NCBI RefSeq assembly: GCF_006345805.1
Contig: NC_043015.1
Span: 37,820,001 to 37,884,000 of the forward strand
Source: Octopus sinensis
Lineage: Eukaryota
DNA: 64,000 nucleotides
Reading direction: 5' to 3'
Below are positions 43,913 through 58,459 of this stretch, one piece after another (position 1 is the stretch's first letter; each line of letters starts with the position of its first letter). The translations under genes and the position numbers were made by a program. Below the pieces are notes generated by a model that had not been told where the DNA came from, did not search any database, and was given only the letters and a program-made list of their open reading frames with translations.

Positions 43913-44017
43913 AGAGGATCGGAAGAACTTATGTCCCACAGCCCAATGGTTACGAACGGGACCGGGATGAGCCCCCACCACGTGGATAGTGCAGATATGA
44001 ACAATGATGCCAAAAAG
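43913..44017 (+). CDS. PTBP1: PTB exon RGSEELMSHSPMVTNGTGMSPHHVDSADMNNDAKK
   Basis: ttacag| acceptor, AAG|gtaagg donor, 105 nt. Matches human RGSDEL...VTNG...NGNDSKK. Confidence 0.95.
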
Positions 44018-44768
44018 GTAAGGAGTTTTGTGAACTTTTGCATGTTACTCTTTATATGTATTCCCCCAGTGTGCTTGTAACTTGGAATATTGAAGTCCCT
44101 CCCTGATTAGTCGCGTGTGGTGGTGATGTTAGCTGGCAACTTAGTGCTTCTTTGTGTCTGGCCATGTGTTTCTGCTACGAATATCAAGTGAAACTAGTTG
44201 TGTGCAAGTGTGGGTGCTGAAGTTGTTAGGAGAGGCCAGACGGTGATGAGAAATTGTAGCGTATAGATACAAACGTTAAGTGTAGGTGCCCGTGTCCCAA
44301 ATACACATCTTGTCTGTTTTGTTGCCGTTGCAAACTGGAATTATATTCTCGTTATTAATGTTAGGAATTCCTCTTTTTTATATATTGGGACCTTACTGTG
44401 TTTGTGTGATAACTCTGGAATTGTGGTGTTTTAGTACATACAAATATTTCCTATCAATATTTAGTGATGTTCATTTATACACTGTTGAGAACTGTTCAGT
44501 TTCTACACTCATTCTTGGATGAATTATTTCGCTCTCCCTCTCTCTCACTCCCCCTTCCCTCCCTCCCTTGGCAGTGTAACTGTGGCTGGCAGGGTGTTTA
44601 TTTCTTGCATTCTGTTTGTGTAATTAATCGCATCAGACCATCAGTCCATTTCATTGCTGATGATAATCTTGGATGAATAAAGAGTTGTTAATAAGTAAAA
44701 CATTTGTTTTGTTAATATTTTCCATAGAAATATGAAATAAAATGTTTTTTTTCTTTTTAAACTTGTAG

Positions 44769-44918
44769 GTAAAACTGGAGCAGAGCCAGGCAGCTACAGT
44801 GTCTAAAGTTGTTCATCTGCGTGGTCTCCCAATAGAGGCATCTGACCAAGATGTTATTCCTCTTGGCATACCTTTTGGCCGCATAACCAATTTTCTACTC
44901 CTGAAGCAAAAGAATCAG
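44769..44918 (+). CDS. PTBP1: PTB exon, RRM1 N-half (VKLEQSQAATVSKVVHLRGLP...LLKQKNQ)
   Basis: ttgtag| acceptor, CAG|gtatgc donor, 150 nt. Homologous to SRVIHIRKLP...GLPFGKVTNLLMLKGKNQ. Confidence 0.96.
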
Positions 44919-45012
44919 GTATGCATTCACCTTTTAATTTCTTTGCAATTCACACTCGAGTAGAGTTTTCCACTTTGCTTGGCCTTCATCCCTTTGAATG
45001 ATCTGTGAAATG

Positions 45013-45042
<30 letters not shown>
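45013..45042. repeat. (CAT)10 microsatellite just upstream of an exon acceptor
   Basis: Direct inspection. Confidence 0.95.
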
Positions 45043-45043
<1 letters not shown>

Positions 45044-45085
45044 TTGGTTGCAAACTTAATCTTTGCCTTTTGTTTTTGTCTGTAG

Positions 45086-45232
45086 GCTTTCATGGAATTC
45101 TCAGACGAGAGACAAGCAGAATCAATGGTGTTATATTACACAAACGACAAACCTAGAGTACGCAACAAAGATGTCTATGTCCAGTTTTCCAACCACAAGG
45201 AGTTGAAGATAGACGTAGCACATCCTTATCAA
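45086..45232 (+). CDS. PTBP1: PTB exon, RRM1 C-half (AFMEFSDERQ...VQFSNHKELKIDVAHPYQ)
   Basis: ctgtag| acceptor, CAA|gtgggt donor, 147 nt, QFSNHKELK motif. Confidence 0.95.
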
Positions 45233-45331
45233 GTGGGTTCACTACTGTTTTCTTACTTACTACTACTACTACTACTACTGCTACTGCTGCTGCTGTAGTG
45301 TTTTCTCTCACCTGTAAACCTCTAAATTAAA

Positions 45332-45519
45332 TTTCATTTCTCAACTGGGGTCCGTACAAGAAAAAAATGGCAAATTGGATCCATGAAAAAATGTTGCTTT
45401 GGGTGTGTTTCTACAGACTTTTGGAAGGGACATCTTTGAAGTAAGATTGGTTTGGGGATCCACCAGAGTAAAATGGGTCATCAATAGGTTCAAAAATAAA
45501 AAGTGGTTGAGAATGACTG
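45332..45519. mobile_element. hAT/Charlie-type MITE, same family as 15446
   Basis: tttctcaactggggtccgt...aagtggttgagaatgactg; left TIR decayed. Confidence 0.65.
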
Positions 45520-45584
45520 TCCTGGTGTCAGGAATGTGTTCTGCCCAGAAACTCCTCTGGGTTGGTGCTTGTCCCTGTTTGTAG

Positions 45585-45780
45585 CAGTAAAACAAGTGAG
45601 GATGTTGAATGGGATGCCAGTCTATCGCAGGGTTGGGTCACACAGCTCCTGCTGTTGGCGCTCATTTTCAGATAAACAGGCTGCAGCCAATGTAGAGTGC
45701 AATGACTTGCCCAAGGGCATTATATACGGTCCAGTCAGAGGAGGATTGATCCAATATCCCCTTAACCTTTAGGCCACATA
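45585..45780 (-). mobile_element. Degenerate CORE-type SINE of a different family
   Basis: Reverse complement contains cccttgggcaagtcattgcactct..aaccctgcgatagactggcatccc. Confidence 0.55.
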
Positions 45781-46108
45781 CATTCACTATAACGTTCGGC
45801 AAGGGTTTACTTTTATCATGAATTTAAATTTCTCTAACCTCCTCCTGTTCTATGGTGACTCGTGTTTCTAGAACTGGCTTTTATGGTCAGCTGCATTCTC
45901 TGATAGTCAACTGCCAAAATGTGCGAGTGTGATTCTGTGGTGCAGGTAAGGTTTTCTGTTGACGTGACTTCTTCTCTGGTGCACACAACGAGTGAAGAAT
46001 GTGTTGGGGTTCTTTCTGCCATTTGTTCTATACTCAAAGATTAATCTCCTGCGATATTTTCCATTTTGTTTGTATATCTTGTCCTCCAACGTTCCTGTTG
46101 TTTTCCAG

Positions 46109-46240
46109 AACACAAATACTCAAGCAGCTTTGCAGGCTGCACAGGCCATCATGGGAAGTCCAGAGGAAATGAACAAGACCATTCTGAGAGTTATTATAGA
46201 TAACATGGTGTTCCAAATCAACATAGACATTCTGTATCAG
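46109..46240 (+). CDS. PTBP1: PTB exon, RRM1-2 linker and RRM2 start (NTNTQAALQAA...TILRVIIDNMVFQINIDILYQ)
   Basis: ttccag| acceptor, CAG|gtaaag donor, 132 nt. Confidence 0.96.
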
Positions 46241-46349
46241 GTAAAGATGATAACGAGATTTATAATTACGGCTTTGATGTAATCAAGATTCATTGATGTC
46301 TTTGAATTAATCAATCATGTGACCACCACTTCTGGTCTGTTTTTTTCAG

Positions 46350-46401
46350 ATATTTTGCAAATTTGGGACGATTCAGAAGATTATTACATTCACAAAAAAT
46401 A
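46350..46401 (+). CDS. PTBP1: PTB exon, RRM2 (IFCKFGTIQKIITFTKN)
   Basis: tttcag| acceptor, A|gtgagt donor, 52 nt, phase 0 to 1. Confidence 0.96.
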
Positions 46402-46840
46402 GTGAGTATATTTCTTTGAAGTTTGTTTCCTAAAGAAATAGGTGGCAGGAGCACTCTTACAATGTTAAAGACTTAACCCTTGCTTCTCTGACAACAAATC
46501 CCATCAAAGTGTACACACTCTCTATTGGTGCCACTTCTCCTCAAAATGTCGCCGCTCTTTTTAATTGCAAAACAGCCAGCATGATACACCGTTCAATTTA
46601 AAATGGAGTTTTTTTTTTTGTTTTTTTTCTTCCCCTCACAGTTAAGCAAATTTGAAAGGGAGTGTGGCTACCAACATAATTTTGCATGAGACATTTTTTT
46701 TGTAAAGTTGCATTCAGACTCCTGACGATGTTTTAGTAATCCCCCACCAAATTCAAAATCAAATAAGTCTTAGATAATGTATCTCCTGCAAAACCTGCTT
46801 CTGACAAAGCTAACTGGGCTTCCAACTCTTTTCTTCATAG

Positions 46841-46899
46841 ATACCTATCAGGCCGTCATACAGTTTAGCGACCCAGTCAGTGCAAGAAGTGCCCGAATG
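46841..46899 (+). CDS. PTBP1: PTB exon, RRM2 (NTYQAVIQFSDPVSARSARM)
   Basis: tcatag| acceptor, ATG|gtaagt donor, 59 nt, phase 1 to 0. Confidence 0.96.
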
Positions 46900-47519
46900 G
46901 TAAGTACAGTTTTTCACATCTGTGAAGGGTTTACCCCCTGTAGTTCATGTTGGCAGTTATTTTGAATCCTTGTTCGTACTTAGGTTAGTGGCTGCTTAGA
47001 AAAGCTGCAGTCGTAGCTGAGTGGTGAAGGAGTTTGTTTTTCAACTTTGTGGTTCGGATTGTCCCACTTTGCAAGCACCTTGAACAAATGGTTTTAAAGC
47101 TCTGAGCTGTCTATGAAATGTTGCAAGTGGATTTTATAAGCAGAAGTGTGTGTGTGTGTGTGTGTGTGTCTGACCTGTGCTAGTAGAAGTCAGCTATAAT
47201 TAAGGGCTAAGTGAAACCTGGATTCCTGTATTTTCTCTTCTAAGCAGAAATGTCAGCTGATGCCCCCCCCCCCAAAAAAAAAAAAACTAGTTCTAGCATG
47301 GCCATTGATCTAATGCAGGGTTGGCAAAGTAGTTAATACTGTTGAGGGTCACTTTGGCTATTTAAGATCCCAGAAAAAAATGTTAAGTTTTAAACGCTGT
47401 GAAGATAGTGTGGATATAAATTTAGAAGAGCATGAAGAATTTAAGGCTAAAAATTCAATAATTTCCATCCAAAACCTTGATGCAATCAACCCATATTCAC
47501 CAAATTCCAAGTACCATCC

Positions 47520-47672
47520 TCTTCATCATCCAACATCTTTTCCATGCTGGCATGGATGGCTTGGACAGTTTGAGAGGTGCTGGAGAGCTACACCAGACTC
47601 TGGCAGGGTTTATATGGCTTGATACCCTCCCCAATGCCCAAAATGAACCGGGTGCTTCTTATGTGGCACCCC
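47520..47672 (-). mobile_element. Family C copy, degenerate
   Basis: catcatccaacatcttttccatgctggcatgg..ggacagtttg..gggtgcttcttatgtggcacc. Confidence 0.7.
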
Positions 47673-47758
47673 CTTTAGCATTTAAACTAACCTGATCTGG
47701 CATGTCAAACATTTTGTAATTTTCATTCAGAAATTTGTATGATGGCCACTGGTGGGAT

Positions 47759-47880
47759 GGGTGAGGTCAGTGATAGAAGTTTACTGGCCCCTACTGGTGG
47801 GGTGGGTGAGGTCAGTGATAGAAGTTTACTGGCCCCTACTGGTGGGTGAGGTCAGTGATAGAAGTTTACTGGCCCCTACT
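47759..47880. repeat. Three identical 37-nt units with 8- and 3-nt G-rich spacers
   Basis: gggtgaggtcagtgatagaagtttactggcccctact at 47759, 47804 and 47844. Confidence 0.95.
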
Positions 47881-47906
47881 CCAATGGTTTGGTTTCTCTC
47901 TTGTAG

Positions 47907-48069
47907 ACTTTGGATGGTCAGAATATTTACAATGGGTGCTGTACGATGAGAATTGATTATTCAAAAATGACGAGTCTTAATGTAAAGTACAATAATGAGA
48001 AGAGCCGAGACTACACCAATCCCAGCCTCCCTGCTGGTGACGCTTCCGTGGATCAGGCTTTGACTTTTG
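47907..48069 (+). CDS. PTBP1: PTB exon, RRM2 end ([20 protein letters not shown]...DQALTF)
   Basis: ttgtag| acceptor, G|gtaagt donor, 163 nt, near-identical to vertebrate PTB. Confidence 0.97.
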
Positions 48070-49357
48070 GTAAGTACACTTCCATCGAATCCATCAGTCC
48101 TTATTCTTGTGCATGTTATGAGAAGAGTATAAAACCGGAAATATGTAAACAGTTGCAAGACTGTCGTTATTAGAAATGATTTCTACTTTACATTTTACCC
48201 TTCATTGCTTTAATTACACTAATTTAAAGACAATTAAAGCCATTGTTAAGCTCAGTGTTTTGTGACTTCTGTGAAGCACTTTCTTCGTACTAATATCAAC
48301 ACAAATCATATCTTTACTTTTGGTTTTGTTTTCTTTTCCATTTCATCTCTGTATGTGTGTATACACACACGTATATACACCTAACATTCATTCCAAGCTG
48401 ACGGTTCGCTGTTATTACTCAGTTTTAGACAAACGTCTGATATATTTCTACCTTGTATTGTTTCTTTTTGTGTTCTTCCATTTTTTTATATATACATGTG
48501 TGTACACGCATACTACAACACACATGCACACACACACTTGTGAAATGTACTGAAAAGCGATTTTCCAATCAACTCATGAATTTCTTTCTTTTTCTAATTC
48601 TGTTTCTGCCATGAATTAACCATTTCTTGAGACACTCTGAATGTGTTTGGTGTGCGAGCAAGAGAGAAATGTTCTGAACTCGAGTTTCTTCCCACGGATA
48701 TGATTGTCTGTTTTTTCCATCTCTTTCTGTTGTGCTTCTTGCTCTTACCATCATCGTCATCCATCTTATCTCATTTGTGCACCTAATGTTTTTGGCCTTG
48801 GACTCGCCTTCGCACTGGAAGGCAGGAAACCCTCCCACCTCCAATGCTTGGTTGCTCTGCTCACCTGCTTTTATTCTTCCTCGACTACCCTACCTTCCTT
48901 CCCATCCATGTTCTTCCTCATCTGACCCTGTCGAAGAAATCAATTTAACCAACTTTAGTGCTACACAGACACAAATTTTTGGCCAGTCCATGTTGCATGA
49001 AATATCTTGTCTAATGAAATCCATTTTGGGGCAAAGTTGGCCAGGCTCTTAATTTAAGATTTCATTCTTTTTATCGTTATTTTTATTATTAATTTTTATA
49101 TTTATTTTAGCGTATGTTCCATCTAAGCTACTAATTATGAGTAATCTCAAGTTTTAACAGTGAAATACTTTTATAAATTCTACATATTCTGTACAGGTAT
49201 GCGTTTAGCATATCAGATAAAACTCGTTGGTCGTCAGATGCTTTTCGATTAAGAGTTTCTCGTGAACTCAACTCTAGATGGAACGTATGCAAGAGTCCAG
49301 TTGGTGTTGTTAAAGCGTTGGATTAATCGCATGCTCCTTGTTTACGAATGTGTTAAG

Positions 49358-49480
49358 GTTCCCCTGGTGTGTTGTCGTCGACAATTGCAGCTGTGCCTGG
49401 CCTAGGAACTGCCCCACTAACCACATTTGGTGCCGCACCCGGAGCTACGCTGCTTTCTGACCCCAGTCAGCAGTATATTG
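49358..49480 (+). CDS. PTBP1: Probable PTB RRM2-RRM3 linker exon (GSPGVLSSTIAAVPGLGTAPLTTFGAAPGATLLSDPSQQYI); 3' boundary uncertain
   Basis: ttaag| acceptor in phase 1, open Ala/Gly/Pro-rich frame resembling vertebrate alternative exon 9 (GAPGIIS...). Only weak donors: 49465, 49480, 49507, 49540 (phase 1) and 49472 (phase 2). Confidence 0.65.
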
Positions 49481-49592
49481 GTGCTGATATGCAGATCTGC
49501 ACTTCTGGTAGTGTAGCATTTTTAATTTTGATAAGCCAGGGTGGTAGTTTTGAACATGCATGCTTCTAATATCTCTTTTGTGTTTGGTCTAT

Positions 49593-49633
<41 letters not shown>

Positions 49634-50268
49634 TCCCCCAGCCCTACTGCATTTCATATAATGCAACATCTGTTTTTTAAAAAAAAAATCCATTCTCTCT
49701 TTTGCGTGCTATTTGCATTTAATGTCTAACGATCCTTTTTCTCTTAGGACTTCTGGTGTGTAAAATAATCTAAAAAGCACTACTACCCTGGTTAAACTTT
49801 ATGGCATGGATTTAGCTTTGCTTGCTCCTCTGACAAACTGTCCTGGCTATATCTTTGCTAGTTCACTTCAACCAAGGTGATGGGAGGTAGAATTTTGCTA
49901 AATCTTTCTAAATGCCTATTTTCAAACTCTCAGCCATCTTCTCTGTGTTTGTTCTAATTTAAAAGAATTAATCACATTTTTCTCTGCTGGATCTTAAACC
50001 CCATCAGTCATCTGTTCTGGGTTTGGTAAAAAAAAATCTTTTCTCTTTTGCTTGGTCCTCTTCTCATGGTTTTTCTCTCTTGCATGCCTTGGTCCTTGGT
50101 CTTGCAAAATCTTGGGGTACCTTGTTACATTTTCTTGACTTACTTACAGGTAATCTTTTTCTTCTTCTTCCCCGCCCACCCTTCTAAACTTTGACATGTC
50201 TTTAATCCTCATAAAAACCGTTCCTTCTGAGGCTCTAGCCTGATTCTTTGCATTTCTCTTGCTTGTAG

Positions 50269-50289
50269 CTCCCGGAGTGGGTCCGCCAG
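50269..50289 (+). CDS. PTBP1: PTB 21-nt linker microexon (APGVGPP)
   Basis: Pyrimidine tract then ttgtag|CTCCCGGAGTGGGTCCGCCAG|gtaagt. Phase 1-1, frame-preserving, consensus donor, GC-rich island in a U/C-rich intron. Confidence 0.75.
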
Positions 50290-50624
50290 GTAAGTCTCTC
50301 TTCCAACTCTTTTGGTAGCCTTATCCCCCCCACCTTTTTTTTTTTTTTTTCAACTCTACCTGTAATGTTTCTAATCCCTCCTCTCTCTGCATGTTCTGCT
50401 GTTTGTCTCTAACCATACTCTCCATTCTCTTCTTTCTCATTTCATCTCTCTCTCTCTACTAACAACTGCTGCTGTGAGTTTTCTATACTGTTTAGTCGTT
50501 AGTCGTGTAGTGTTTGTTTATCAGGACTGACCGGTCTTCTAATTAACTTCAGCATCCAACTAACGAGGAGACTGATTTGACTAATGTCAATTAATCTGAA
50601 AGGCATTTTATTGTCTACAAAGGC

Positions 50625-50625
<1 letters not shown>

Positions 50626-50668
<43 letters not shown>
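50626..50668. repeat. (CT)n microsatellite
   Basis: Direct inspection. Many further (CT)n, (CA)n, (TG)n, (CTA)n and (TAA)n tracts are not listed. Confidence 0.9.
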
Positions 50669-50672
<4 letters not shown>

Positions 50673-51019
50673 CTCTTTCTTTCTTTCTTGTTGAGGCTTC
50701 GTTACTAATCTTGTAAATCTCTGTTGATTGTGAGTCTGTCTGTCCGTCCTGTTATATGTTAATAAAACTGCTGTTTTGTCCCTGATCTTTGCTTTGTCAA
50801 CACTGAACAAGCAGACCATTGATCAAAATCATTCCAACCATGACCATCCCGTGTAAACATTTAGAACTCCAATATGATTGCCATTTTGAGATGAAGTGTG
50901 GTTTGAGGGAGATCTCTTTTACTCTGGGTCTACAGGGACCAGCGATTGGTGACCCTCACCTATGATCTTTATTTAATAAACCTCTACACTCATGCATATG
51001 TTTTCACATGCATCAGCAT

Positions 51020-51275
51020 TAGACTATGGCCATGGTGAAGCACTGCCTTGGAGAAATTTTGATTGAACCCATTGACCCCTTACAACATCGGTCTCTGTTG
51101 CTAAACCACTGTTATGGAGATGTCGACACACCAACGCCAGTTGTCATGGTGGACAAACACAGACTCTCACACACACAATCTACTACATATGACAGGCTTC
51201 TTTCAGTTTCCATCTGCCAAATCTACTGACTTTGGTTAGACCAAGGCTAGAGTAGAAGACGTTTGCTCAAGGTAC
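51020..51275 (-). mobile_element. SINE family A copy lacking head
   Basis: gacaggcttctttcagtttccatctgccaaat..gtagaagacgtttgctcaaggt. Confidence 0.75.
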
Positions 51276-51758
51276 TACTACTACCACAGTCACCCCTGTA
51301 CCTATAGCATTGTGTAATAGTTTTTCTGGGGTATCTGGATATGTGTTTTGGGTTGAATTGATGTCTCCTTTCTGTAGAATATGGTTTTTGTCTCTTGTAT
51401 AATGCAAGTCACTTCATTCCAAGTCCATTCTCCCGTGCTAGTATGGATTAGACAAATGAAAGATGCTCTCCTAAGAGGTCACCCATGTTGACTGGCCTAT
51501 AAGAAGCACCCTACCCCACACCTCAAAATTACCCTGGCTCCTCAAAGCTGGACAGCATATAAGCTAATTTTTGTCCCTGGCACTCTGTATATGCCCTGCT
51601 GAAACTGGGATGCCTCCACTCCACCCGTGTCTTTTGTGCCCTCAAACACGGTCGTTGCCATGGGGATTCACAACAGAGAGTGGAAAAATAGTTCTTCTGT
51701 TTTCTCTTGGTGATATTTTTACCAATTTGGGGCTAAATTGGTTAATTTCAAATTACCT

Positions 51759-51954
51759 TTAACCCTTTTGATATTCAGCTTACCTTGTTAAATGTTCTGT
51801 TTGTTTATTCACATTGCTTTGAATTATTCATGCAGTATTTTGTACCTTTGAGGTGTGAATAATGAGATTTTTAGAATGTTGTAAGGATAGGTGTGAGGGG
51901 CCAGTTTGGACAGGGTTTAGATGTGTCCAGTTTGAAATGCTGATAACAGGTTAA
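51759..51954. mobile_element. MITE family D with TTAA-flanked CCCTTT termini (piggyBac-like)
   Basis: ttaaccctttt...aatgctgataacaggttaa. Internal tagaatg..gtaaggataggtgtgag is shared with other copies. Confidence 0.7.
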
Positions 51955-52717
51955 TGTAAAATGGTGTGTGTGTGTTTCCCGACCCCTTTTTGACATTCTG
52001 GTTGTCCAGTGATGTTAACTTTGTCTTCTTGACCCCGTGAACCATTGTTTCATGTTAACATCGGTGAACATTGTCGTTCACTGCACTGTTTACAGGCAAA
52101 TTGGTAGGCGATAAGTAAGCATTGTAGTAATTAGCAGTTTCGTAAATTCTTCGTCTGGAACCAGACTTCACAGCAGCAACATTTGTAGCACATCTCTGAA
52201 CCACCGTTTAATGAGGGGCATCTTTGTGGGGTCCTCCTACTTAACTGCCACTTTCCCCCCATTTTCTTCTCTCTCTCTCTCGTTAATATTCTTGCATGTT
52301 TCATTTTATGTATCTATCTGTCTTACTCTCTCTCTCTTTCTCTCAATACTAACCTACTTTCATGTATTTTTTTTTAGATTCATTTTTGCATTTAAAACCA
52401 AGACTTTACAATTCCAATTTAGAAATTTAAAATCAATCCACAATTATTTATATTTAAATAAAATTATCTTTGTAAACTGTAAAGCTTATTGCAAACATCT
52501 TATTAGGAACAGCCCTGCTTCATCATCACTGTTAGCCAAGTTCTAAATGATTAATACTAATAATACTAATAATAATAATAATAGTGTGAAGTGACAACAG
52601 AGTGTTAAACGACAACGGCTGCTGCTGCGGTTACAACTAAACTCAAGGTGTGGGTTCTTCACTGAAGCAGGGACTAATGTAGTCAAATTAATTGTGTTGC
52701 TTTTTTTGTTCTATCAG

Positions 52718-52836
52718 CTGTACCGATGTCTGGCTTTGGTTTGACTGCTGCAGGTATGGGTGCTGCACGGCTCAGTATGCCCTTACAATCTCAAGCTGGT
52801 AACTGTGTGCTCTTGGTTTCCAATCTGGATGAAGAG
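52718..52836 (+). CDS. PTBP1: PTB exon, linker end and RRM3 start (AVPMSGFGL...AGNCVLLVSNLDEE)
   Basis: tatcag| acceptor, GAG|gtatgt donor, 119 nt. Human equivalent is AGNSVLLVSNLNPE. Confidence 0.96.
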
Positions 52837-54005
52837 GTATGTGCCCTTTATTTATTTGATACGTATATTGTCTAGTTTATACCCTGACATCTATACAGAA
52901 GAAAGAAAAAATAAAAAATAAAAAAACGTTTATCTGGACAGAAAGACTGGGGTATTAAGGTCTACCACCACCTCTACATTCGCAGGCCTCTACATTCTGC
53001 GACCTATCTGCCTGCGCCATCTCCTTTCCATTCTCTAATCTCACTGCATCATTTGAGTGGACAACTTCCCACAAAATGGCTGCCCACAAGTGTTTTGCTG
53101 TTTGACCAGGAATCTTTTTTTTTCTTCTTTCATTTTTTTTTTAGATTTTTAGAATTTGTCTCTTTCTCTGGTTCCTTCGCAGAACTTTTACTACCAAAAA
53201 AAAATATTTTTGTTGTGAAGACTTTTTCTTTTATCTCCTCCTCCTCCCCACCCCAATCCATGTGCTCCTCTGCCTAACAAACTCATGATGGATCAAGATT
53301 GGTTTTGGATATGGTGCTAACTGCAAACTTCTTGTGTCTTCCAAACACTGTCTGTAGAAAAAGCTCCTCCTCCTCCGACATATCACCTAATGGTTAGGGG
53401 GTGGGGCAGGATTTCTCATTTTTCTTCGATGCATCATCTCATGAGAAACAATTCTTCCACTTCTCAACAATTTCCTCCTGCTTTGGTCCACCAATTCTTT
53501 GTCTTTGTCTGCTGGAGCCACCCAAACCTCTGACCATTATCGCTGTGGTTTCTTGACCCAGTCTCTTCTACATCAGCTAGCTCTGTCCACATCTGACCAT
53601 CTCTCACAAAACCTCACAATTCCTTACAAATAACACTTGGCTCTTTTAGAATACCTTTTCCCCACCCCCCTCTCTCTCTTTTTTTTTTTTTTCCAAAATT
53701 TCAACCAAATGCTCCCTCTCCTCTCCTTCAATACTTCGTTATGCATGCTTCCTCATTAGCATGTCTTTTTTTTTTCCCTCCCTCTCTCTCTCTCCCCCTT
53801 CCCCCCACTAATTACCCACCTCTTCTCTCTCTCTCTCTCTCCTCCTCCTCCTATACTGATGCTACTGCTACACTAGCTGTCCAACTAACCACCCTTGACC
53901 AGCCACTGCTGCCTGTACCACACTGTATTACTTTCATTGATATTGTTGTTCTTGCTCTTTTTCAGAGTTTTATCTTCCATTTTACACACTCATGTATCAA
54001 CAAAA

Positions 54006-54170
54006 CTGATTTGTTCCTATTTTCTCTTTTTTTTCTTTTTTTTCTTTTTTTTTTTTTTCCGTCCCAACTTACTTCGCTGGTGTTCCTCCACATGGACTAT
54101 CTATCGCTCGCTCGGACACTGATCTCACCCTATCTTCCGCTCTGCTATATTCCTGTTCCTATGACTCTAG
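54006..54170 (+). promoter_or_regulatory. Candidate distant branch point and polypyrimidine tract for the 34-nt exon
   Basis: No AG dinucleotide from 53968 to 54168. CTGAT at 54006-54010 is followed directly by a ~50-nt almost pure U/C tract. Confidence 0.6.
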
Positions 54171-54204
54171 ATGGTCACGCCCGACGTTCTTTTTACCCTT
54201 TTTG
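54171..54204 (+). CDS. PTBP1: PTB 34-nt exon (MVTPDVLFTLF), counterpart of PTBP1 exon 11 / PTBP2 exon 10
   Basis: ctctag|ATGGTCACGCCCGACGTTCTTTTTACCCTTTTTG|gtatgt. 34 nt, phase 0 to 1, needed to keep frame. Human equivalent is RVTPQSLFILF. Confidence 0.93.
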
Positions 54205-54733
54205 GTATGTTTTTAAGCACTCTTTTATTTCATTTGACAATTTATATAGAAAAACTTAGAAAAGCTAAGTGACATTTCATTTAATGTTCTCTCTTTTAAC
54301 ACCAAGAGATGTGCTGCTGCTGCCGCTGCCACTGCTGCTACCTGACTGAGTCTCTATTGTGTCCAGCTCTATTTCTTTTAGTGCCAACTAACTTAACCAA
54401 ACCTTCTCCAAGATCACTCACTTCAGCTTCTTCTAAATTAATAACCAGTCTTGAAACCAATTACTTCCATCATGCTTTATTTATATATTTTTTTTAATTG
54501 TTTTTAGTTTTCTTTCTTTTTTTTTTAATTAATTAATTTTCTGACCCCTCCCCTCCCCCTTTTCATCTTTCTCTCTTTCTCTTCCTCTCTCCTGACAACA
54601 GGTGAGGTGTTCAGTGTTTGATTATTTTCCAACATAGCCTAAAGAACCGTTTTAATAAAGTATGATGGTTACTTCTTCCAAGGGCTGCGTGGGTTTTTCA
54701 TACATAAAGTTACACTCAAAAGATTACTTTTTT

Positions 54734-54770
<37 letters not shown>

Positions 54771-55447
54771 TCTTCCCCTCCTCAGGTAAGTGGTGGTGGA
54801 GACCCTGGCTGTGTCAGGAGGTTCAGTCAGGTATTTTAGTCTGGTATCATATGGTCCACTCTGCTCAAAATACGCATGCTCTTGAGATAGCACAGATTTT
54901 ATGTAACACACACACACACACAGTTTTGGTTTCGCTAATGGCTCATCCAATTTCCATTCCCAAAACTCGACCATTGGGCATTTTTAATCAGAAATTATGC
55001 AGAACCTCTTTAGAACAGCATTGATTATTGTTGTATTCAAAACTTATTCTGGCACCTTCCATTTTCACATATTGTTCTTGGGCGTTCACCACATGTTGTA
55101 CTTATTTTACACAATATTCTGATTCACTCCATGTTGACATGGAAACAGCTACACACACACTCACACATGTATATCCTAATAAAGCAATGCAGGCTCCTTG
55201 AATCCTAATTTGGGCCACTTTTAAAGAAAGAGACTGGCCTCTGTTGGCACAAAAACAAACTTGTCCTTCCTTGTTAAGGCCAAACCACTACGGTATGGTG
55301 CAGGGTGGGGTGTGAGTTCCATGTTAAGGTGTTTCGAAGACGGGGTTTTGGCTAGTGTCTTCCTAAGACCCAGTCCTCGACAAATCTAGTTCGGTTCATC
55401 GGTTTTTACTCCAGTCTCAGTACATGTTGTGCTTTTTATTTTACTAG

Positions 55448-55540
55448 GTGTGTACGGTGATGTGCAACGCGTGAAAATCCTTTTCAACAAGAAGGATAAT
55501 GCACTGGTACAAATGGCGGAGCCTCACCATGCTCAATTAG
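55448..55540 (+). CDS. PTBP1: PTB exon, RRM3 ([31 protein letters not shown])
   Basis: tactag| acceptor, G|gtaagt donor, 93 nt. Confidence 0.97.
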
Positions 55541-55683
55541 GTAAGTTCTCTCCTCCCTACCCCCCCTCACTCTTTGGCTCTTCCGGTTGTAATTTATCAA
55601 CTTAAATCCTTTCCGATCCTGACCCCCCACACACACACAACACACCTCTAATGTTTCGTTTTCTCTCTTTCTCTCTGTTTCAG

Positions 55684-55781
55684 CCAAAACTTACCTGGAT
55701 AAGCTGACTTTGTATGGCAAACAGATCAGGGTGGCTCCCTCCAAACACACAGTGGTCCAGATGCCCAAGGAAGGCCAGCAG
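55684..55781 (+). CDS. PTBP1: PTB exon, RRM3 end ([33 protein letters not shown])
   Basis: tttcag| acceptor, CAG|gtagca donor, 98 nt. Confidence 0.96.
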
Positions 55782-55888
55782 GTAGCAAATATCTATCCGT
55801 TGGCATTGATGGATTTCACTTGAAATTTGAAATTAATCGGTTTTGTTTTTTCTTGTATCATTCTGCTATTGCTTGGTTCTCGTTGCAG

Positions 55889-56007
55889 GATTCCGGCTTA
55901 ACAAGAGACTACACAAATTCCCCACTCCACAGATTCAAGCGACCTGGCTCAAAGAACTGTCAGAATATATTCCCCCCCTCAGCAGTTTTGCATTTATCTA
56001 ACATTCC
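55889..56007 (+). CDS. PTBP1: PTB exon, RRM3-4 linker and RRM4 start ([40 protein letters not shown])
   Basis: ttgcag| acceptor, CC|gtgagt donor, 119 nt. Confidence 0.97.
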
Positions 56008-56116
56008 GTGAGTATCCCCGGACCCACTTTCTTCCGGCTCCAAATCTTCTTGAATATTTCAGTTCTGCTCATGTTTTATTCCATTCATTGAATCTCTTTT
56101 ATTTTACCGTCTTCAG

Positions 56117-56191
56117 ATCTAATGTTCCTGAAGAACAGCTCAAAGATATGTTTGCTGAATATGGCACTGTAAAAGGGTTCAAATTCTTTCC
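56117..56191 (+). CDS. PTBP1: PTB exon, RRM4 (SNVPEEQLKDMFAEYGTVKGFKFF)
   Basis: cttcag| acceptor, CC|gtaagt donor, 75 nt, phase 2-2. Confidence 0.96.
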
Positions 56192-56228
56192 GTAAGTATT
56201 TTGTTTTCTCTCTCTTTATTTATGAAGG

Positions 56229-56400
56229 TTGGGCCAGGGGTGGTTTAAGAAGTTCATTTCCCAATCCCCTGCTTCCAGGTTCACTCCCACTGCACTGCAC
56301 CTTGGCCAAATGTCGTCTCTAATAGTTCTGGGCCAACCAAAGCCTTGGCAGTGGGGATTTCGTGGGCAGAAACTGAAGGATCTTTCTATGTGTGTGTTTG
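56229..56400 (+). mobile_element. SINE family A copy
   Basis: ggggtggtttaagaagtt..ccaggttcactcccactgcactgcaccttggccaa..ccaaccaaagccttg..gaaactgaa. Confidence 0.75.
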
Positions 56401-57513
56401 TGCCTGTATCTGTTTCCATTGGCATGTGACTGTAGTTGCTGTGTTTAGCTCACAATTTTAAGATCGTGGGTTCAATTCCTCACATTGCTCCTGTCCTCTC
56501 GACTGGCCGAAATGTGTTGTACCTGTAATTGCCACACTTCATGTAGTTGTGCTGTCCTTTTTTGAGAACTACATTTGGTTGGGGTGGGTGGGGCATGTCT
56601 GGAGTGCTCAGTTGATTGGATGAATAGGATCTGAGTGTCCAGTTTGGTAAGGTGGTCAGTGCTCTTCACTAGAAACTGTCCATCATCTGCTTCATGCTTT
56701 CAATGCCATGTGGAGTAACATCTTTCTTACTTAAAAATGTGGTTAGTGAGAGGAAAGGCATCAGGCTGTGAGCCAATGCTATCTAACTCATGCTGGCATG
56801 GAAAAGCAGACGTAAGACCTAATCTCTCTTGACTGGTTTTGCCAATGACCAAAATTCTTATCTTACCAAACGTTTCAACGCTCAGTATAGACGAGTGTGT
56901 GATTTAAGGTTTGGCCACCCCTCATCATGTGACTGCATAATGGCTCCCATGTTGTCCTTTCACTTATTAATATGGCTGCTGTTACTCTACACAGTAATAT
57001 ATTTACTAATTATTTAGAGTTATTTCACTTCAGTGTTTGCTGTTAATAAATAATGGTATTTAATGATGGACCCATGTAGACTGTTTTGGAAGTCACCCCA
57101 CTCGCCTTTATAAAATGCTGGGCAGCTCTGCTATCTTTCCTATTGCAATATGCCTGCGCTTGTTTGTCCACAATACTTTACCCTGACACAAACGCACCCC
57201 CTCCTCTCCTTCGTTGATTGGTTTGTTTTTTGGTTTTTTTTTCTTGCAAGTTACTTAGTGATTTCGTTGGTGCCAGCAGCAGAAAAAGATGCCCATTCAG
57301 TACAAACTGTAAATTGGTTGGCATTAGGAAGAGTATCCAGCTACGAGGGACCCATTTCCTGGCTGGCACTGGAAATTGATGCAGCCCCTCAGCCCACCCA
57401 GGTCCTGTCAAACTGTCTGGCCCATCCTTTGCATGGGAGTTGGAGGGTGGAATGGACAATGAATGGTGATGATTTGGTGCTTGGTCTACCAGTACTTTTG
57501 ATTGGCCAAAATA

Positions 57514-57640
57514 TTTAACCTGTTTTTACATTCAAACTGGCCAGATCTAGTCTTTCCCACCTGCCCTACAATGTTATTTTAAGATCTTGAAACTGAGAGA
57601 CAATTCAAAACAATTAAGCGTAATATCAATGTTATAGGAT
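57514..57640. mobile_element. MITE family D degenerate copy
   Basis: ttaacctgtttttacattcaaactggccagatct..cccacctgccctacaatgttatt. Confidence 0.6.
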
Positions 57641-57740
57641 TAAGTGGAGGAGTTAAAACTCATCGGCTGTATTTATAGTTTTTGATAAAAGTATTTGTAA
57701 AAAATTTTTCCTTTTTTTTTTTTTTTTTTTTTCCTTCTAG

Positions 57741-57804
57741 GAAAGACAGGAAAATGGCCCTCATCCAAATGGGATCCATTGAAGAAGCTGTGAAAGCTCT
57801 TATT
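57741..57804 (+). CDS. PTBP1: PTB exon, RRM4 (KDRKMALIQMGSIEEAVKALI)
   Basis: ttctag| acceptor after long U tract, ATT|gtaagt donor, 64 nt. Confidence 0.97.
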
Positions 57805-58390
57805 GTAAGTATTTGTTTCTCCTTAACCTGATTCATGCTTTGCCCTGTCTGTACATTGTGCTATTCTTACCCCCTCTAACCATGGCGCTCATGACTGATG
57901 TAGTACACTCTATTCTTGCTCTTCAAAATCCTTGGTGATGCAACATGTAGCTGGTGCTCATGTAGAATAGGATTCCATAAGTTGAGCAAGAAACCTTTAA
58001 CAATCCTGGCAATTGTCTAAGCTACTTTCTTTGATAGCATTGAAGACACCCCCCACCCCAAAAGAAAAATGGCTTGAAAAAAATAAAAGAAAACCACCCT
58101 GGGTACCTACATGCAGAGTTGGAACTCCCATAAGTTAATCTTATCCCTGGTTGTACATTTTTTTTTTTCACCTGCTGAAATCGTGCATCCAAGTAGTGCC
58201 ATGTATTTTGTCTGCCATCAAATACACTGTGTTGGTCACTGAATGTAAAGCCCCCCTTTCTTCCCTCCCCCCTCAAGCTTTTGTCAACGTCCCACTTTAA
58301 AAAAAAATGCCTAATCCTTGGGTCAATTCTGGAAATCCTAACCAAATGCTCTTCTTTTTTCTTCCTCTCTTTCTCTCTCTCTCTTTGCAG

Positions 58391-58459
58391 TGCCTCCACA
58401 ACTATCCTTTGAGTGAAAGCAATCATTTGCGTGTTTCATTTTCCAAGTCAACAATTTGA
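58391..58459 (+). CDS. PTBP1: PTB last coding exon (CLHNYPLSESNHLRVSFSKSTI*)
   Basis: ttgcag| acceptor, TGA at 58457-58459, conserved C-terminus HLRVSFSKSTI. Confidence 0.97.
   Translation, partial: CLHNYPLSESNHLRVSFSKSTI

What the first reader, a model, noticed from the sequence alone, without database searches (positions are those of the whole stretch)
54508..54835. Two tandem acceptor-donor fusions just downstream of the 34-nt exon (candidate recursive sites 2 and 3)
Seen: a long pyrimidine tract with CTGAC then caacag|gtgagg at 54601/54602, and a 60-nt U/C tract then ctcag|gtaagt at 54785/54786, a perfect ratchet-point consensus. The second is followed by another donor, CAG|gtattt at 54830. 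This defines a 45-nt frame-preserving RS-exon-like unit (GKWWWRPWLCQEVQS) that would disrupt RRM3. Established: recursive sites usually occur in very long introns, and vertebrate ones use RS-exons. Two in a 1.2-kb intron beside the NMD-switch exon is unexpected. Inference: an extra regulatory layer, such as decoy exons, staged intron removal or PTB-gated skipping. This is the best candidate for an undescribed mechanism in the window.
Basis: partly seen in the sequence, partly recalled or inferred. Interest (0 to 1): 0.75.

Follow-up and report, generated by a model that had tools for sequence, protein, structure and literature searches.

The report
Acceptor-donor fusions in octopus PTBP intron
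In the Octopus sinensis gene for the splicing regulator PTB, the short intron after its self-regulating 34-base exon holds two splice-acceptor/splice-donor fusions that are real, unlikely to be chance and kept in a second octopus, but their use could not be tested, and most of the supposed 45-base mini-exon is one arm of an older conserved RNA helix.

Summary
The window is Octopus sinensis chromosome CM016877.1. It carries the PTBP gene on the + strand. Every coordinate in the finding is correct.

In the 1,243-nt intron after the 34-nt exon (the homologue of vertebrate PTBP1 exon 11), both strong pyrimidine-tract+CAG sites are fused to GTRAG. Only 0.16-0.35 such fusions are expected on the whole 64-kb strand.

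Both fusions and the 45-nt unit are identical in O. bimaculoides. However, both introns flanking the exon are unusually conserved as a whole. The fusions are absent from a more distant, probably cephalopod, contig (site 1 only; site 2 lies beyond its end), a limpet and bird PTBP2.

No annotated isoform or database protein contains the 15-residue insert.

New result: the 3' part of the unit, including its "donor" CAG|GTA, forms a 16-bp long-range helix with 54339-54354. All 16 pairs are kept in the distant contig, where the fusions are missing.

Best reading (about 0.4): these are PTB-tract pseudo-3' splice sites with a built-in 5' splice site, allowing traceless re-splicing inside a helix-closed regulatory loop. 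Whether they are used is untested.

Verdict: real, moderately interesting, unproven. It would be a variant of known recursive sites, not a new mechanism.

The parts
52718..52836 (+). PTBP coding exon ending ...VSNLDEE, with donor GAG|GTATGT. If the 34-nt exon is skipped, this exon joins 55448 and the frame shifts to a stop (…[11 protein letters not shown]).
   Evidence: annotated Octopus isoforms; translation by eye.
53665..54060 (+). Cluster of four long pure pyrimidine runs (53665-53694, 53764-53806, 53819-53852, 54020-54060) upstream of the 34-nt exon. They are candidate PTB-binding tracts. None has a nearby downstream AG.
   Evidence: The AG-exclusion zone before the exon is 203 nt.
54171..54204 (+). 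34-nt exon (MVTPDVLFTLFG), homologue of vertebrate PTBP1 exon 11 / PTBP2 exon 10, the NMD-switch exon. It has a weak donor, TTG|GTATGT.
   Evidence: The nucleotide sequence is 32/34 identical in the limpet Patella. PMC1940037 describes the vertebrate exon.
54205..55447 (+). Host intron of 1,243 nt between the 34-nt exon and exon 55448-55540.
   Evidence: It is 90% identical to O. bimaculoides over its full length, against 27-87% for other introns of the gene.
54339..54354 (+). Arm 1 of the conserved long-range helix (TACCTGACTGAGTCTC). Extended pairing in Octopus covers 54321-54373.
   Evidence: (I4), and (present in both MFE and centroid).
54541..54545 (+). CTGAC branch-point candidate for site 1 (A at 54544), 57 nt upstream of the AG, with no intervening AG.
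   Evidence: the AG-exclusion zone is 94 nt. That it acts as a branch point is inferred.
54546..54593 (+). CU-rich tract 1 (pure pyrimidine run 54566-54593). It would serve as a PTB-type binding tract and as the pyrimidine tract of pseudo-3' splice site 1.
   Evidence: The substitutions relative to O. bimaculoides keep pyrimidines.
54600..54607 (+). Site 1: AG|GTGAGG acceptor-donor fusion (junction 54601|54602).
   Evidence: Identical in O. bimaculoides. No counterpart in contig L013.
54727..54783 (+). CU tract 2: a 57-nt pure pyrimidine run, T11(CT)n CCCTTCTTCCCCTCCTC. It is the best pyrimidine tract before any AG in the window.
   Evidence: Repeat length varies in O. bimaculoides.
54784..54791 (+). 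Site 2: AG|GTAAGT acceptor-donor fusion (junction 54785|54786), matching CAG|GTAAGT at 9 of 9 positions.
   Evidence: Identical in O. bimaculoides.
54786..54830 (+). 45-nt unit. It is in frame and has no stop (KWWWRPWLCQEVQS plus a split Gly). It is an RS-exon-like body, and from 54796 onward it is also paired as arm 2 of the extended helix.
   Evidence: It is not found in any annotated isoform or in the 5.8-billion-cluster protein database.
54818..54833 (+). Arm 2 core of the conserved long-range helix (GAGGTTCAGTCAGGTA). It contains the weak donor CAG|GTATTT (54830|54831). Extended pairing covers 54795-54855.
   Evidence: In L013 the orthologous arm sits in otherwise unalignable sequence and pairs with 16/16 Watson-Crick pairs.
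55448..55540 (+). Next constitutive exon ([31 protein letters not shown]-). Its acceptor is tttattttactAG with a modest pyrimidine tract. The exon starts with GTGTGT.

Best explanation
The two AG|GT junctions are selected splice-site-like elements in the regulatory intron just after the PTB autoregulatory 34-nt exon of Octopus sinensis PTBP.

Anatomy. Each site has three parts. First comes a long CU-rich tract, which is both a PTB-type binding site and an excellent 3' splice-site tract with an AG-exclusion zone and upstream branch-point candidates. The tract ends in CAG, and a consensus 5' splice site is fused directly to it.

Proposed mechanism. The sites act as traceless re-splicing (recursive) sites.
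- When PTB does not occupy a CU tract, its strong pseudo-3' splice site can be used by the donor of the 34-nt exon, or by the donor of exon 52836.
- The fused GTRAGT then regenerates a donor that is as good as or better than the original. TTG|GTAAGT replaces TTG|GTATGT.
- The rest of the intron is removed in a second step, and the mRNA is unchanged.

The 45-nt unit is not a coding exon. Most of it is the 3' arm of a long-range RNA helix (54339-54354 with 54818-54833, extended to 54321-54373 with 54795-54855). This helix is also kept in a more distant, probably cephalopod, species. It closes a 463-nt loop around both fusions and both CU tracts, and it buries the unit's weak donor.

Shown: the motifs, their non-randomness, their identity in O. 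bimaculoides, the absence of the insert from known proteins, and the complementarity and conservation of the helix.

Inferred: that the sites are spliced, that PTB binds the tracts, and the direction of any effect on inclusion of the 34-nt exon.
For: - Coordinates and motifs.
- Only 2 of 22 AGGTRAG in the window follow a tract that is at least 80% pyrimidine. Both lie in this intron, 184 nt apart.
- Expected GTRAG after the 104 pyrimidine-tract+AG sites on the strand is 0.16-0.35. In this intron both independent pyrimidine-tract+AG sites carry it.
- Donor ranking: site 2 scores 9/9 and 7/9 after ligation to the 34-nt exon, against 6/9 for that exon's own donor. The unit's donor CAG|GTATTT scores 7/9 and lacks +4A and +5G. 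A ratchet-point donor stronger than the RS-exon donor is the rule described in PMC8605326.
- AG-exclusion zones are 94 and 63 nt.
- Six of the window's 20 sense-strand pyrimidine runs of at least 25 nt flank this exon, against 2 such runs on the whole antisense strand. [quoted passage not shown]
- Both fusions and the unit are 100% identical in O. bimaculoides, against a background of 86% in aligned sequence.
- The insert is not in any annotated Octopus isoform. It is also not in any of 5.8 billion protein clusters, in a search that contained its 5-residue words.
- Helix: (dG -43, -40 and -34 kcal/mol in three species). One search finds 16/16 pairs in all three species, with two GU-to-AU changes. 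One search finds it is the longest stem in both species, with 0 of 200 shuffles reaching it in L013. Searches find it in the MFE and centroid structures of the whole region.
Against: - No splicing intermediates, lariats or junction reads could be examined, so use of the sites is pure inference.
- The host intron is only 1,243 nt. In short introns, recursive splicing has been described as infrequent and stochastic (PMC10156609).
- Conservation is not site-specific. The first 631 nt of the intron are 92.7% identical. The 67-nt perfect run over site 2 and the unit ranks only about 41st in the window.
- The fusions are absent where deeper comparison was possible. The L013 contig has a pyrimidine tract followed by cttacAG|TTAATG instead of site 1. 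Patella and bird PTBP2 have no pyrimidine-tract+AGGT in this intron at all.
- The helix hides the donor that exon definition of an RS-exon would need. This fits a suppressing role at least as well as a recursive one.
- The window-wide Poisson test alone gives only P of about 0.01-0.05.
Confidence: 0.4

Rival explanations
1. PTB/U1 decoy module without catalysis. The CU tracts are PTB-binding silencers for the 34-nt exon. The fused consensus donors recruit U1 snRNP next to bound PTB, forming dead-end complexes that help repress, or time, use of the weak 34-nt-exon donor. The sites are bound but not spliced.
For: - Dense sense-strand CU tracts lie on both sides of the exon, as around vertebrate PTB and nPTB regulated exons (PMC1940037).
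- Consensus donors sit directly after the tracts.
- The insert never appears in known proteins.
- From memory, not checked here: PTB bound next to a 5' splice site can contact U1 snRNA and block further assembly (Sharma et al. 2011).
Against: - A branch-point candidate, an AG-exclusion zone, a perfect tract and CAG together make an unusually good 3' splice site. Why keep the AG if only PTB and U1 binding matter?
- No binding data exist for octopus PTB.
- Like the main explanation, it cannot be tested here.
Confidence: 0.22
2. The helix is the functional element and the fusions are incidental. The long-range duplex is an RNA bridge or loop-out. It shortens the effective intron and tucks away cryptic signals. 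The unit is conserved as arm 2, and AG|GTAAGT just 5' of the arm and AG|GTGAGG in the loop have no role of their own.
For: - The helix is kept in the L013 species, where the fusions are absent.
- The whole unit from 54796 is paired in Octopus.
- RNA bridges and loop-outs are established regulators of splicing (review PMC10790352).
Against: - This does not explain why both pyrimidine-tract+AG sites carry GTRAG.
- Site 2's GTAAGT (54786-54791) lies outside the paired region.
- There are no compensatory double changes, only GU-to-AU changes.
- In the Octopus intron alone, the stem is reached by 7 of 200 shuffles when GU pairs are allowed.
Confidence: 0.15
3. Chance by-products. Any long pyrimidine tract must end at a purine. 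In a CT-rich intron under blanket constraint, two AGGTRAG arose by luck and are carried along by slow divergence.
For: - The window-wide Poisson P is only about 0.01-0.05.
- The whole region is conserved.
- The fusions are absent in L013, Patella and bird.
- O. bimaculoides has a third pyrimidine-tract+AGGTAAGG elsewhere in the locus (L012:32035). No AGGTRAG is listed near the corresponding part of the window, though the position was not aligned directly.
Against: - Both of the only two pyrimidine-tract+AG sites in the intron carry the motif.
- Site 2 is a perfect 9/9 consensus.
- The upstream tracts conspicuously avoid AG. This suggests selection acts on AG placement in this region.
Confidence: 0.15
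4. Genuine cassette exons. Either the 45-nt unit is a rare in-frame micro-exon that alters RRM3, or 54602-54659 is a 58-nt poison exon. Inclusion would be tissue-specific.
For: - The unit is in frame and has no stop.
- In L013 a 39-nt stretch between aatttaAG and the conserved CAG|GTA is also in frame and free of stops (my reading).
- The 58-nt alternative carries an early TGA.
Against: - No annotated isoform among more than 16 per species contains the insert, and no database protein does.
- A W-rich 15-mer inside RRM3 breaks the domain match.
- A consensus donor at the exon's own 5' end would remove the exon after ligation (PMC8605326).
- The unit's donor is weak and buried in the helix.
Confidence: 0.08

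Closest known systems
Drosophila ratchet points with cryptic RS-exons (Hatton 1998, Burnette 2005, Duff 2015, Joseph 2018; summarised in PMC8605326)
   Same: - An acceptor and a donor are juxtaposed behind a strong pyrimidine tract.
- A short cryptic exon (about 50 nt; 45 nt here) ends in a weaker donor.
- The ratchet-point donor is stronger than the RS-exon donor, so the exon should be skipped and leave no trace in mRNA.
   Different: - The host intron is 1.2 kb rather than tens of kb.
- There are two sites 184 nt apart.
- The RS-exon body is perfectly conserved and in frame. Fly RS-exon bodies are poorly conserved and usually out of frame.
- The RS-exon donor is base-paired in a long-range helix.
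- No intermediates have been shown.
Vertebrate RS-exons and EJC-repressed recursive splicing (Sibley 2015; Blazquez 2018, PMC6224609), and recursive sites found by lariats in introns of many sizes (PMC10156609)
   Same: - Recursion starts from exon definition of an RS-exon.
- The outcome is set by competition between the regenerated donor and the RS-exon donor.
- Recursive splicing is not limited to giant introns.
   Different: Those cases rest on RNA evidence, and this one does not. Here the sites sit in the autoregulatory intron of a splicing repressor whose own binding motif forms the recursive pyrimidine tract.
PTBP1 exon 11 / PTBP2 exon 10 autoregulatory AS-NMD switch (Wollerton 2004; Spellman 2007, PMC1940037)
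   Same: - The exon is 34 nt long and sits at the same place in RRM3.
- Skipping it shifts the frame.
- The AG-exclusion zone is long (203 nt).
- The upstream intron is conserved.
- Many CU tracts lie on both sides.
   Different: Acceptor-donor fusions and a long-range helix in the downstream intron are not part of the published vertebrate description. Bird PTBP2 intron 10 has neither.
Long-range RNA bridges and loop-outs that regulate splicing (SF1, ENAH, Dscam docking/selector; review PMC10790352)
   Same: Two conserved complementary boxes hundreds of nt apart in one intron. One box covers a 5' splice-site-like sequence, and the loop encloses splice signals.
   Different: - No compensatory double substitutions have been seen yet.
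- No functional test has been done.
- The loop holds PTB-type tracts and acceptor-donor fusions rather than an exon.
PTB-repressed cryptic exons and decoy exons (Ling 2016; Parra 2018; recalled from memory, not read here)
   Same: CU-rich tracts upstream of non-annotated exon-like units that PTB would keep silent. The units could engage the spliceosome without entering mRNA.
   Different: Here each unit begins with a consensus donor, which would erase it even if it were used.

Membership tests
Recursive splice site (ratchet point) with RS-exon | Juxtaposed acceptor and donor (YAG|GTRAGT) behind a strong pyrimidine tract | tested here: met
   Site 1 is caacAG|GTGAGG with 80% pyrimidines in the 20 nt upstream. 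Site 2 is cctcAG|GTAAGT with 100% and a 57-nt pure tract.
Recursive splice site (ratchet point) with RS-exon | A short cryptic exon (about 50 nt) closed by a downstream donor that is weaker than the ratchet-point donor | tested here: met
   Met for site 2: a 45-nt unit, with donor CAG|GTATTT at 7/9 against 9/9 genomic and 7-8/9 regenerated. Site 1 is only doubtful, with AAA|GTATGA 58 nt downstream at 5/9. Caveat: the site 2 donor is paired in a helix.
Recursive splice site (ratchet point) with RS-exon | Residence in a long intron (typical rather than strictly defining) | tested here: not met
   The intron 54205-55447 is 1,243 nt. Shorter host introns have been reported (PMC10156609).
Recursive splice site (ratchet point) with RS-exon | The AG|GT motif is conserved across species more than its surroundings | tested here: inconclusive
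   The sites are identical in O. bimaculoides, but so is most of the first 631 nt. Site 1 is absent in L013, and both sites are absent in Patella and bird PTBP2.
Recursive splice site (ratchet point) with RS-exon | The cryptic exon is absent from mature mRNA | tested here: met
   No annotated O. sinensis, O. bimaculoides or O. vulgaris isoform contains the insert, and no protein in the 5.8-billion-cluster database does. This is weak evidence, because it is equally expected if the site is never used.
Recursive splice site (ratchet point) with RS-exon | Splicing intermediates: upstream-exon-to-ratchet-point junction reads, lariats starting at the ratchet-point donor, or a sawtooth read profile | not testable with these tools
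   No RNA-seq reads can be accessed here. Protein-level searches for read-through or inclusion ORFs found nothing.
PTB-autoregulated NMD-switch exon (PTBP1 exon 11 type) | A 34-nt exon at the same position in RRM3 whose skipping shifts the frame to an early stop | tested here: met
   Exon 54171-54204 encodes MVTPDVLFTLFG. Joining 52836 to 55448 reads [11 protein letters not shown]. The vertebrate exon is described in PMC1940037.
PTB-autoregulated NMD-switch exon (PTBP1 exon 11 type) | Extended AG-exclusion zone / distant branch point, with a conserved upstream intron | tested here: met
   The AG-exclusion zone is 203 nt, the longest of the gene's exons. About 135 nt of upstream intron can be aligned with Patella.
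PTB-autoregulated NMD-switch exon (PTBP1 exon 11 type) | Multiple PTB-type CU tracts on both sides of the exon | tested here: met
   Six pure pyrimidine runs of 28-57 nt lie within 53665-54783.
PTB-autoregulated NMD-switch exon (PTBP1 exon 11 type) | PTB-dependent skipping, and NMD of the skipped mRNA | not testable with these tools
   This needs knock-down or over-expression experiments and NMD inhibition.
Conserved long-range RNA helix (RNA bridge / loop-out) | Two complementary boxes, both conserved across species, with pairing kept where the sequence changes | tested here: met
   There are 16 pairs, all formed in three species. Two positions change GU to AU. It is the longest stem in both introns. 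Arm 2 in L013 sits in unalignable sequence.
Conserved long-range RNA helix (RNA bridge / loop-out) | Compensatory changes on both sides of a pair | tested here: not met
   No pairs show a change on both sides. Only two distinct core helix sequences (three species) were available.
Conserved long-range RNA helix (RNA bridge / loop-out) | Pairing shown in the cell, with an effect on splicing | not testable with these tools
   This needs DMS or SHAPE probing and disrupt-and-restore mutants.

The most novel reading that the evidence does not exclude
A PTB-gated, helix-timed recursive switch.
- PTB occupancy of the two CU tracts decides whether the weak donor of the 34-nt NMD-switch exon is first spliced to a nearby recursive acceptor.
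- That first step swaps the weak donor for a consensus one and deletes helix arm 1, which unmasks downstream signals.
- This commits the exon to inclusion.
- High PTB blocks the step and the exon is skipped.

Recursive sites would then be the working parts of an autoregulatory feedback loop in a splicing factor, not a device for long introns.
Probability: 0.12. Interest if true: 0.75.

Novelty: new variant of a known kind. Interest (0 to 1): 0.45.

Why it matters
PTB autoregulation through the 34-nt exon is a textbook case of splicing-coupled decay, but how the exon's weak splice sites are read is still only partly understood.

If these fusions are used, recursive or re-splicing sites can serve in a short regulatory intron. 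They could act as a fail-safe that erases the consequences of using a very strong PTB-tract pseudo-acceptor, or as a step that PTB gates.

The conserved helix gives a concrete, mutable structure to test. The nucleotide-level conservation of the exon and its flanks from octopus to limpet suggests the regulatory core is far older than vertebrates.

If the sites are not used, the result is still useful. It would show that perfect ratchet-point look-alikes can sit silently beside a regulated exon, which warns against motif-only calls of recursive splicing.

Tried and rejected
- Coding micro-exon. A search that contained the insert's words, the read-through ORFs and the spliced junction peptide found no protein carrying it. 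The only hit was a genomic ORF from another species. No annotated isoform has it. The insert splits the RRM3 match.
- Known structured RNA in the intron. Rfam gave no match at E <= 1 over 52800-55500.
- Local hairpins around either site. Z-scores were +1.27 and -0.77, so none is significant.
- Transposon or dispersed repeat origin. Only the CT microsatellite part matches elsewhere in the window. The similarity between site 1 and site 2 is just CT-tract similarity (D1).
- Deep conservation of the fusions. The Patella locus and the bird PTBP2 locus lack them.
- Loci that gave no sequence to compare. The Solemya gene range was too long to fetch. The Pygathrix hit was an intronless PTBP1 retrocopy.
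- More cephalopod loci. Exact look-ups of shorter isoforms failed because only the longest product per gene is indexed. The HMMER representative search with the conserved flank ORF found only the same contig family. The species behind L013 could not be named.
- A second, Octopus-only 15-bp helix around site 1 (54467-54481 with 54654-54668). It is not significant against shuffles.
Full report
**What the window is**

The window matches Octopus sinensis GCA_006345805.1, chromosome CM016877.1, at 100% identity. Window 1-58959 equals L018 4192-63150. A polypyrimidine-tract-binding protein gene (PTBP) runs on the + strand, with coding exons from about 43913 to 58459. Most of the window upstream of these is its large 5' intron.

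The exons around the finding are:
- 52718-52836, ending ...VSNLDEE.
- 54171-54204, a 34-nt exon encoding MVTPDVLFTLFG.
- 55448-55540, encoding VYGDVQRVK....

The 34-nt exon is the counterpart of vertebrate PTBP1 exon 11 / PTBP2 exon 10. Skipping that exon, promoted by PTB itself, sends the mRNA to nonsense-mediated decay (PMC1940037). Joining 52836 to 55448 here shifts the frame to [11 protein letters not shown]-stop. The exon has a 203-nt AG-exclusion zone, the longest in the gene. Four long pyrimidine runs lie upstream of it and two lie downstream. This is the same architecture described for the vertebrate exons (PMC1940037).

**Observation check**

- caacAG|GTGAGG at 54601|54602.
- A 57-nt pure pyrimidine run at 54727-54783, followed by cctcAG|GTAAGT at 54785|54786.
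- tcAG|GTATTT at 54830|54831.
- A 45-nt unit that is in frame and has no stop, reading KWWWRPWLCQEVQS between two halves of a Gly codon.

The insert would split the RRM3 Pfam match.

One correction is needed. The CTGAC next to site 1 (54592-54596) is only 6 nt from the AG, so it is an unlikely branch point. A second CTGAC at 54541-54545 sits 57 nt upstream with no AG in between and is the better candidate.

**Is it more than chance?**

- The window has 22 AGGTRAG on both strands. Only these two follow a tract that is at least 80% pyrimidine.
- On the + strand there are 104 pyrimidine-tract+AG sites. By composition, 0.16-0.35 of them should be followed by GTRAG, and two are. The Poisson P is about 0.01-0.05.
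- Within the intron the only two independent pyrimidine-tract+AG sites both carry GTRAG. At 0.0016-0.0034 per site, this is of order 1e-5 before allowing for post-hoc choice of the intron.
- The four pyrimidine runs upstream of the exon have no AG nearby, so AG placement in this region looks constrained.

I conclude the fusions are unlikely to be accidents, although the window-wide test alone is only modest.

**Conservation**

The O. bimaculoides locus (L012) aligns to the window at 86% identity over the 78% that aligns.

Both fusions, the tract ends and the whole unit are identical in the two species. The perfect run is 54768-54834, 67 nt. This is not specific to the sites, however:
- The first 631 nt of the intron are 92.7% identical.
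- The two introns flanking the 34-nt exon are the best conserved in the gene.
- The window holds 61 perfect runs of at least 60 nt.

Deeper comparisons are negative.
- A genomic contig from another mollusc, probably a cephalopod (L013-L016; Logan runs; species not named by the tools), was recovered through a read-through ORF. It aligns for about 290 nt upstream and about 100 nt downstream of the exon. It then diverges, and it has a pyrimidine tract followed by cttacAG|TTAATG instead of site 1. The contig ends in a T-run about 577 nt past the exon, so site 2 cannot be judged.
- The limpet Patella caerulea (L017) has no long pyrimidine run and no pyrimidine-tract+AGGT in the equivalent intron.
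- Bird PTBP2 (L019) also has neither.

The fusions are therefore a lineage-specific addition. They are at least as old as the O. sinensis / O. bimaculoides split.

**Transcript-level evidence**

None of the annotated isoforms of O. sinensis, O. bimaculoides or O. vulgaris contains the insert. I ran a word-indexed search of 5.8 billion protein clusters. The query carried the insert, the spliced junction peptide and the genomic read-through ORFs. It found no protein with the insert.

This fits an RS-exon that is always removed. It fits a site that is never used equally well. No reads, junctions or lariats could be examined with these tools.

**The new element: a conserved long-range helix**

An inverted-repeat scan found 54339-54354 (TACCTGACTGAGTCTC) complementary to 54818-54833 (GAGGTTCAGTCAGGTA). 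As RNA this is 16 contiguous pairs, 14 Watson-Crick and 2 GU. Arm 2 contains the very "donor" CAG|GTA that closes the 45-nt unit.

- In Octopus the pairing extends to 54321-54373 with 54795-54855, so almost the whole unit is arm 2. The duplex energy is -43 kcal/mol in O. sinensis and -40 in O. bimaculoides.
- In the distant contig the same two boxes are present: TACCTGACTGAATCTC at 927 and GAGATTCAGTCAGGTA at 1268. They form 16 of 16 Watson-Crick pairs (-34 kcal/mol). Arm 2 there lies in otherwise unalignable sequence.
- The two positions that differ from Octopus convert GU pairs into AU pairs. There are no double compensatory changes.
- It is the longest stem in the intron in both species. 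Against dinucleotide shuffles, 7 of 200 reach it in Octopus when GU pairs are allowed, and 0 of 200 reach it in L013 with Watson-Crick pairs only.
- It appears in both the MFE and the centroid fold of the whole 411-571-nt region. The z-score is -2.87 in L013.

The helix closes a 463-nt loop in Octopus that contains both CU tracts and both fusions. It is kept in L013, which lacks at least site 1. It explains the perfect conservation and the odd G-rich, Trp-coding composition of the unit without invoking an exon.

**Mechanism**

Best reading, confidence about 0.4. The CU tracts are PTB-type binding tracts and at the same time excellent pseudo-3' splice sites. Each is fused to a consensus donor. 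If a tract is used when PTB is not on it, the regenerated donor lets the remainder of the intron be removed, and the mRNA is unchanged. After ligation to the 34-nt exon the donor becomes TTG|GTAAGT, 7 of 9, against 6 of 9 for the exon's own TTG|GTATGT. This is traceless re-splicing, in other words recursive splicing.

The rule that a stronger ratchet-point donor out-competes the RS-exon donor (PMC8605326) is met for site 2. The helix loops the module out and hides the weak downstream donor. It could suppress the pseudo-exon. Or, because a first step to site 1 or site 2 would delete arm 1, it could order the steps.

These last points are inference. PTB binding, actual splicing at the sites and the direction of any effect on the 34-nt exon are not shown.

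Rival readings:
- A PTB/U1 decoy module that is bound but not spliced (0.22).
- The helix alone is functional and the fusions are incidental (0.15).
- Chance (0.15).
- A true micro-exon or poison exon (0.08).

**Comparison with known systems**

The anatomy of site 2 matches a ratchet point with an RS-exon (PMC8605326, PMC6224609). It differs in four ways:
- The intron is short. Recursive splicing in shorter introns has been reported, mostly as a stochastic event (PMC10156609).
- The RS-exon body is conserved and in frame.
- The RS-exon donor is paired in a helix.
- There is no RNA evidence.

The gene context matches the PTB autoregulatory switch (PMC1940037). The helix belongs with RNA bridges and loop-outs (PMC10790352). 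I found no paper linking recursive splicing with PTBP genes or with cephalopods.

**Novelty and interest**

If real, this is a variant of a known kind: recursive sites placed in a short autoregulatory intron and framed by a conserved helix. It is not a new mechanism. A splicing specialist would find it a neat, testable hypothesis, but nothing here shows function. Interest is 0.45.

**Limits**

- Only three informative species were available.
- The background was estimated from one 64-kb window plus one orthologous locus.

Noticed in passing
window 54036-54240; L017 32480-32665; L013 680-860; L019 2100-2200: The 34-nt exon differs at only 2 of 34 nt between octopus and the limpet Patella, synonymous sites included. 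About 135 nt of upstream intron (ccgtcc..gctggtg..tcgctcggacactga..tccgctctgctata) and about 30 nt downstream (GTAyGTTkTTAAGCACTCTT) can also be aligned. The start of bird PTBP2 intron 10 (GTATGTTATTGTTAGCACTATAC) looks similar. This may be a very old intronic regulatory core.
   Followed up: partly
window 54467-54481 with 54654-54668: A second, Octopus-only 15-bp helix (one GU pair) encloses site 1 in a 172-nt loop. It covers an AATAAA hexamer and the weak donor-like AAA|GTATGA 58 nt after site 1. It appears in the MFE and centroid folds but is not significant against shuffles.
   Followed up: partly
window, whole + strand versus - strand: Pure pyrimidine runs of at least 25 nt number 20 on the sense strand and 2 on the antisense strand. 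Pyrimidine-tract+AG sites number 104 against 51. This is a strong transcription-strand asymmetry across the PTBP locus.
   Followed up: no
window 54835-54846: A 12-nt insertion (TTTAGTCTGGTA, flanked by GGTAT repeats) is present in O. sinensis relative to O. bimaculoides. It starts right after the CAG|GTAT of the unit's donor, and conservation drops from this point.
   Followed up: no
window 55776-55790: Annotated isoforms differ by one Val (QQDSG versus QQVDSG). The sequence CAGCAG|GTA|GCAAAT suggests alternative donors 3 nt apart, the distal one being GC rather than GT.
   Followed up: no
window 55448-55453: The constitutive exon after the intron itself begins with GTGTGT. Its junction with the upstream exon therefore regenerates a weak donor-like sequence: TTG|GTGTGT at 5/9 or GAG|GTGTGT at 6/9.
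   Followed up: no
window 1-43000 (for example 19312-19478, 1730-1863, 25864-25978); 48550-50330: Many long runs are perfectly conserved with O. bimaculoides in the large upstream intron, up to 167 nt. Runs in 48550-50330 lie where the alternative linker exons seen in the isoforms should be (exon positions not mapped). Their nature elsewhere was not examined.
   Followed up: no
L012 32035 (O. bimaculoides): A third pyrimidine-tract+gAG|GTAAGG fusion lies in the long upstream intron of O. bimaculoides. No AGGTRAG is listed near the corresponding part of the O. sinensis window. This is an example of such a motif without conservation.
   Followed up: partly
L013 1245-1283: In the distant contig, the stretch between aatttaAG and the conserved CAG|GTAACT is 39 nt. 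It is in frame and has no stop (ESQVQNRSFEIQS), echoing the in-frame 45-nt unit of Octopus. This may be coincidence or a hint of an old micro-exon.
   Followed up: no
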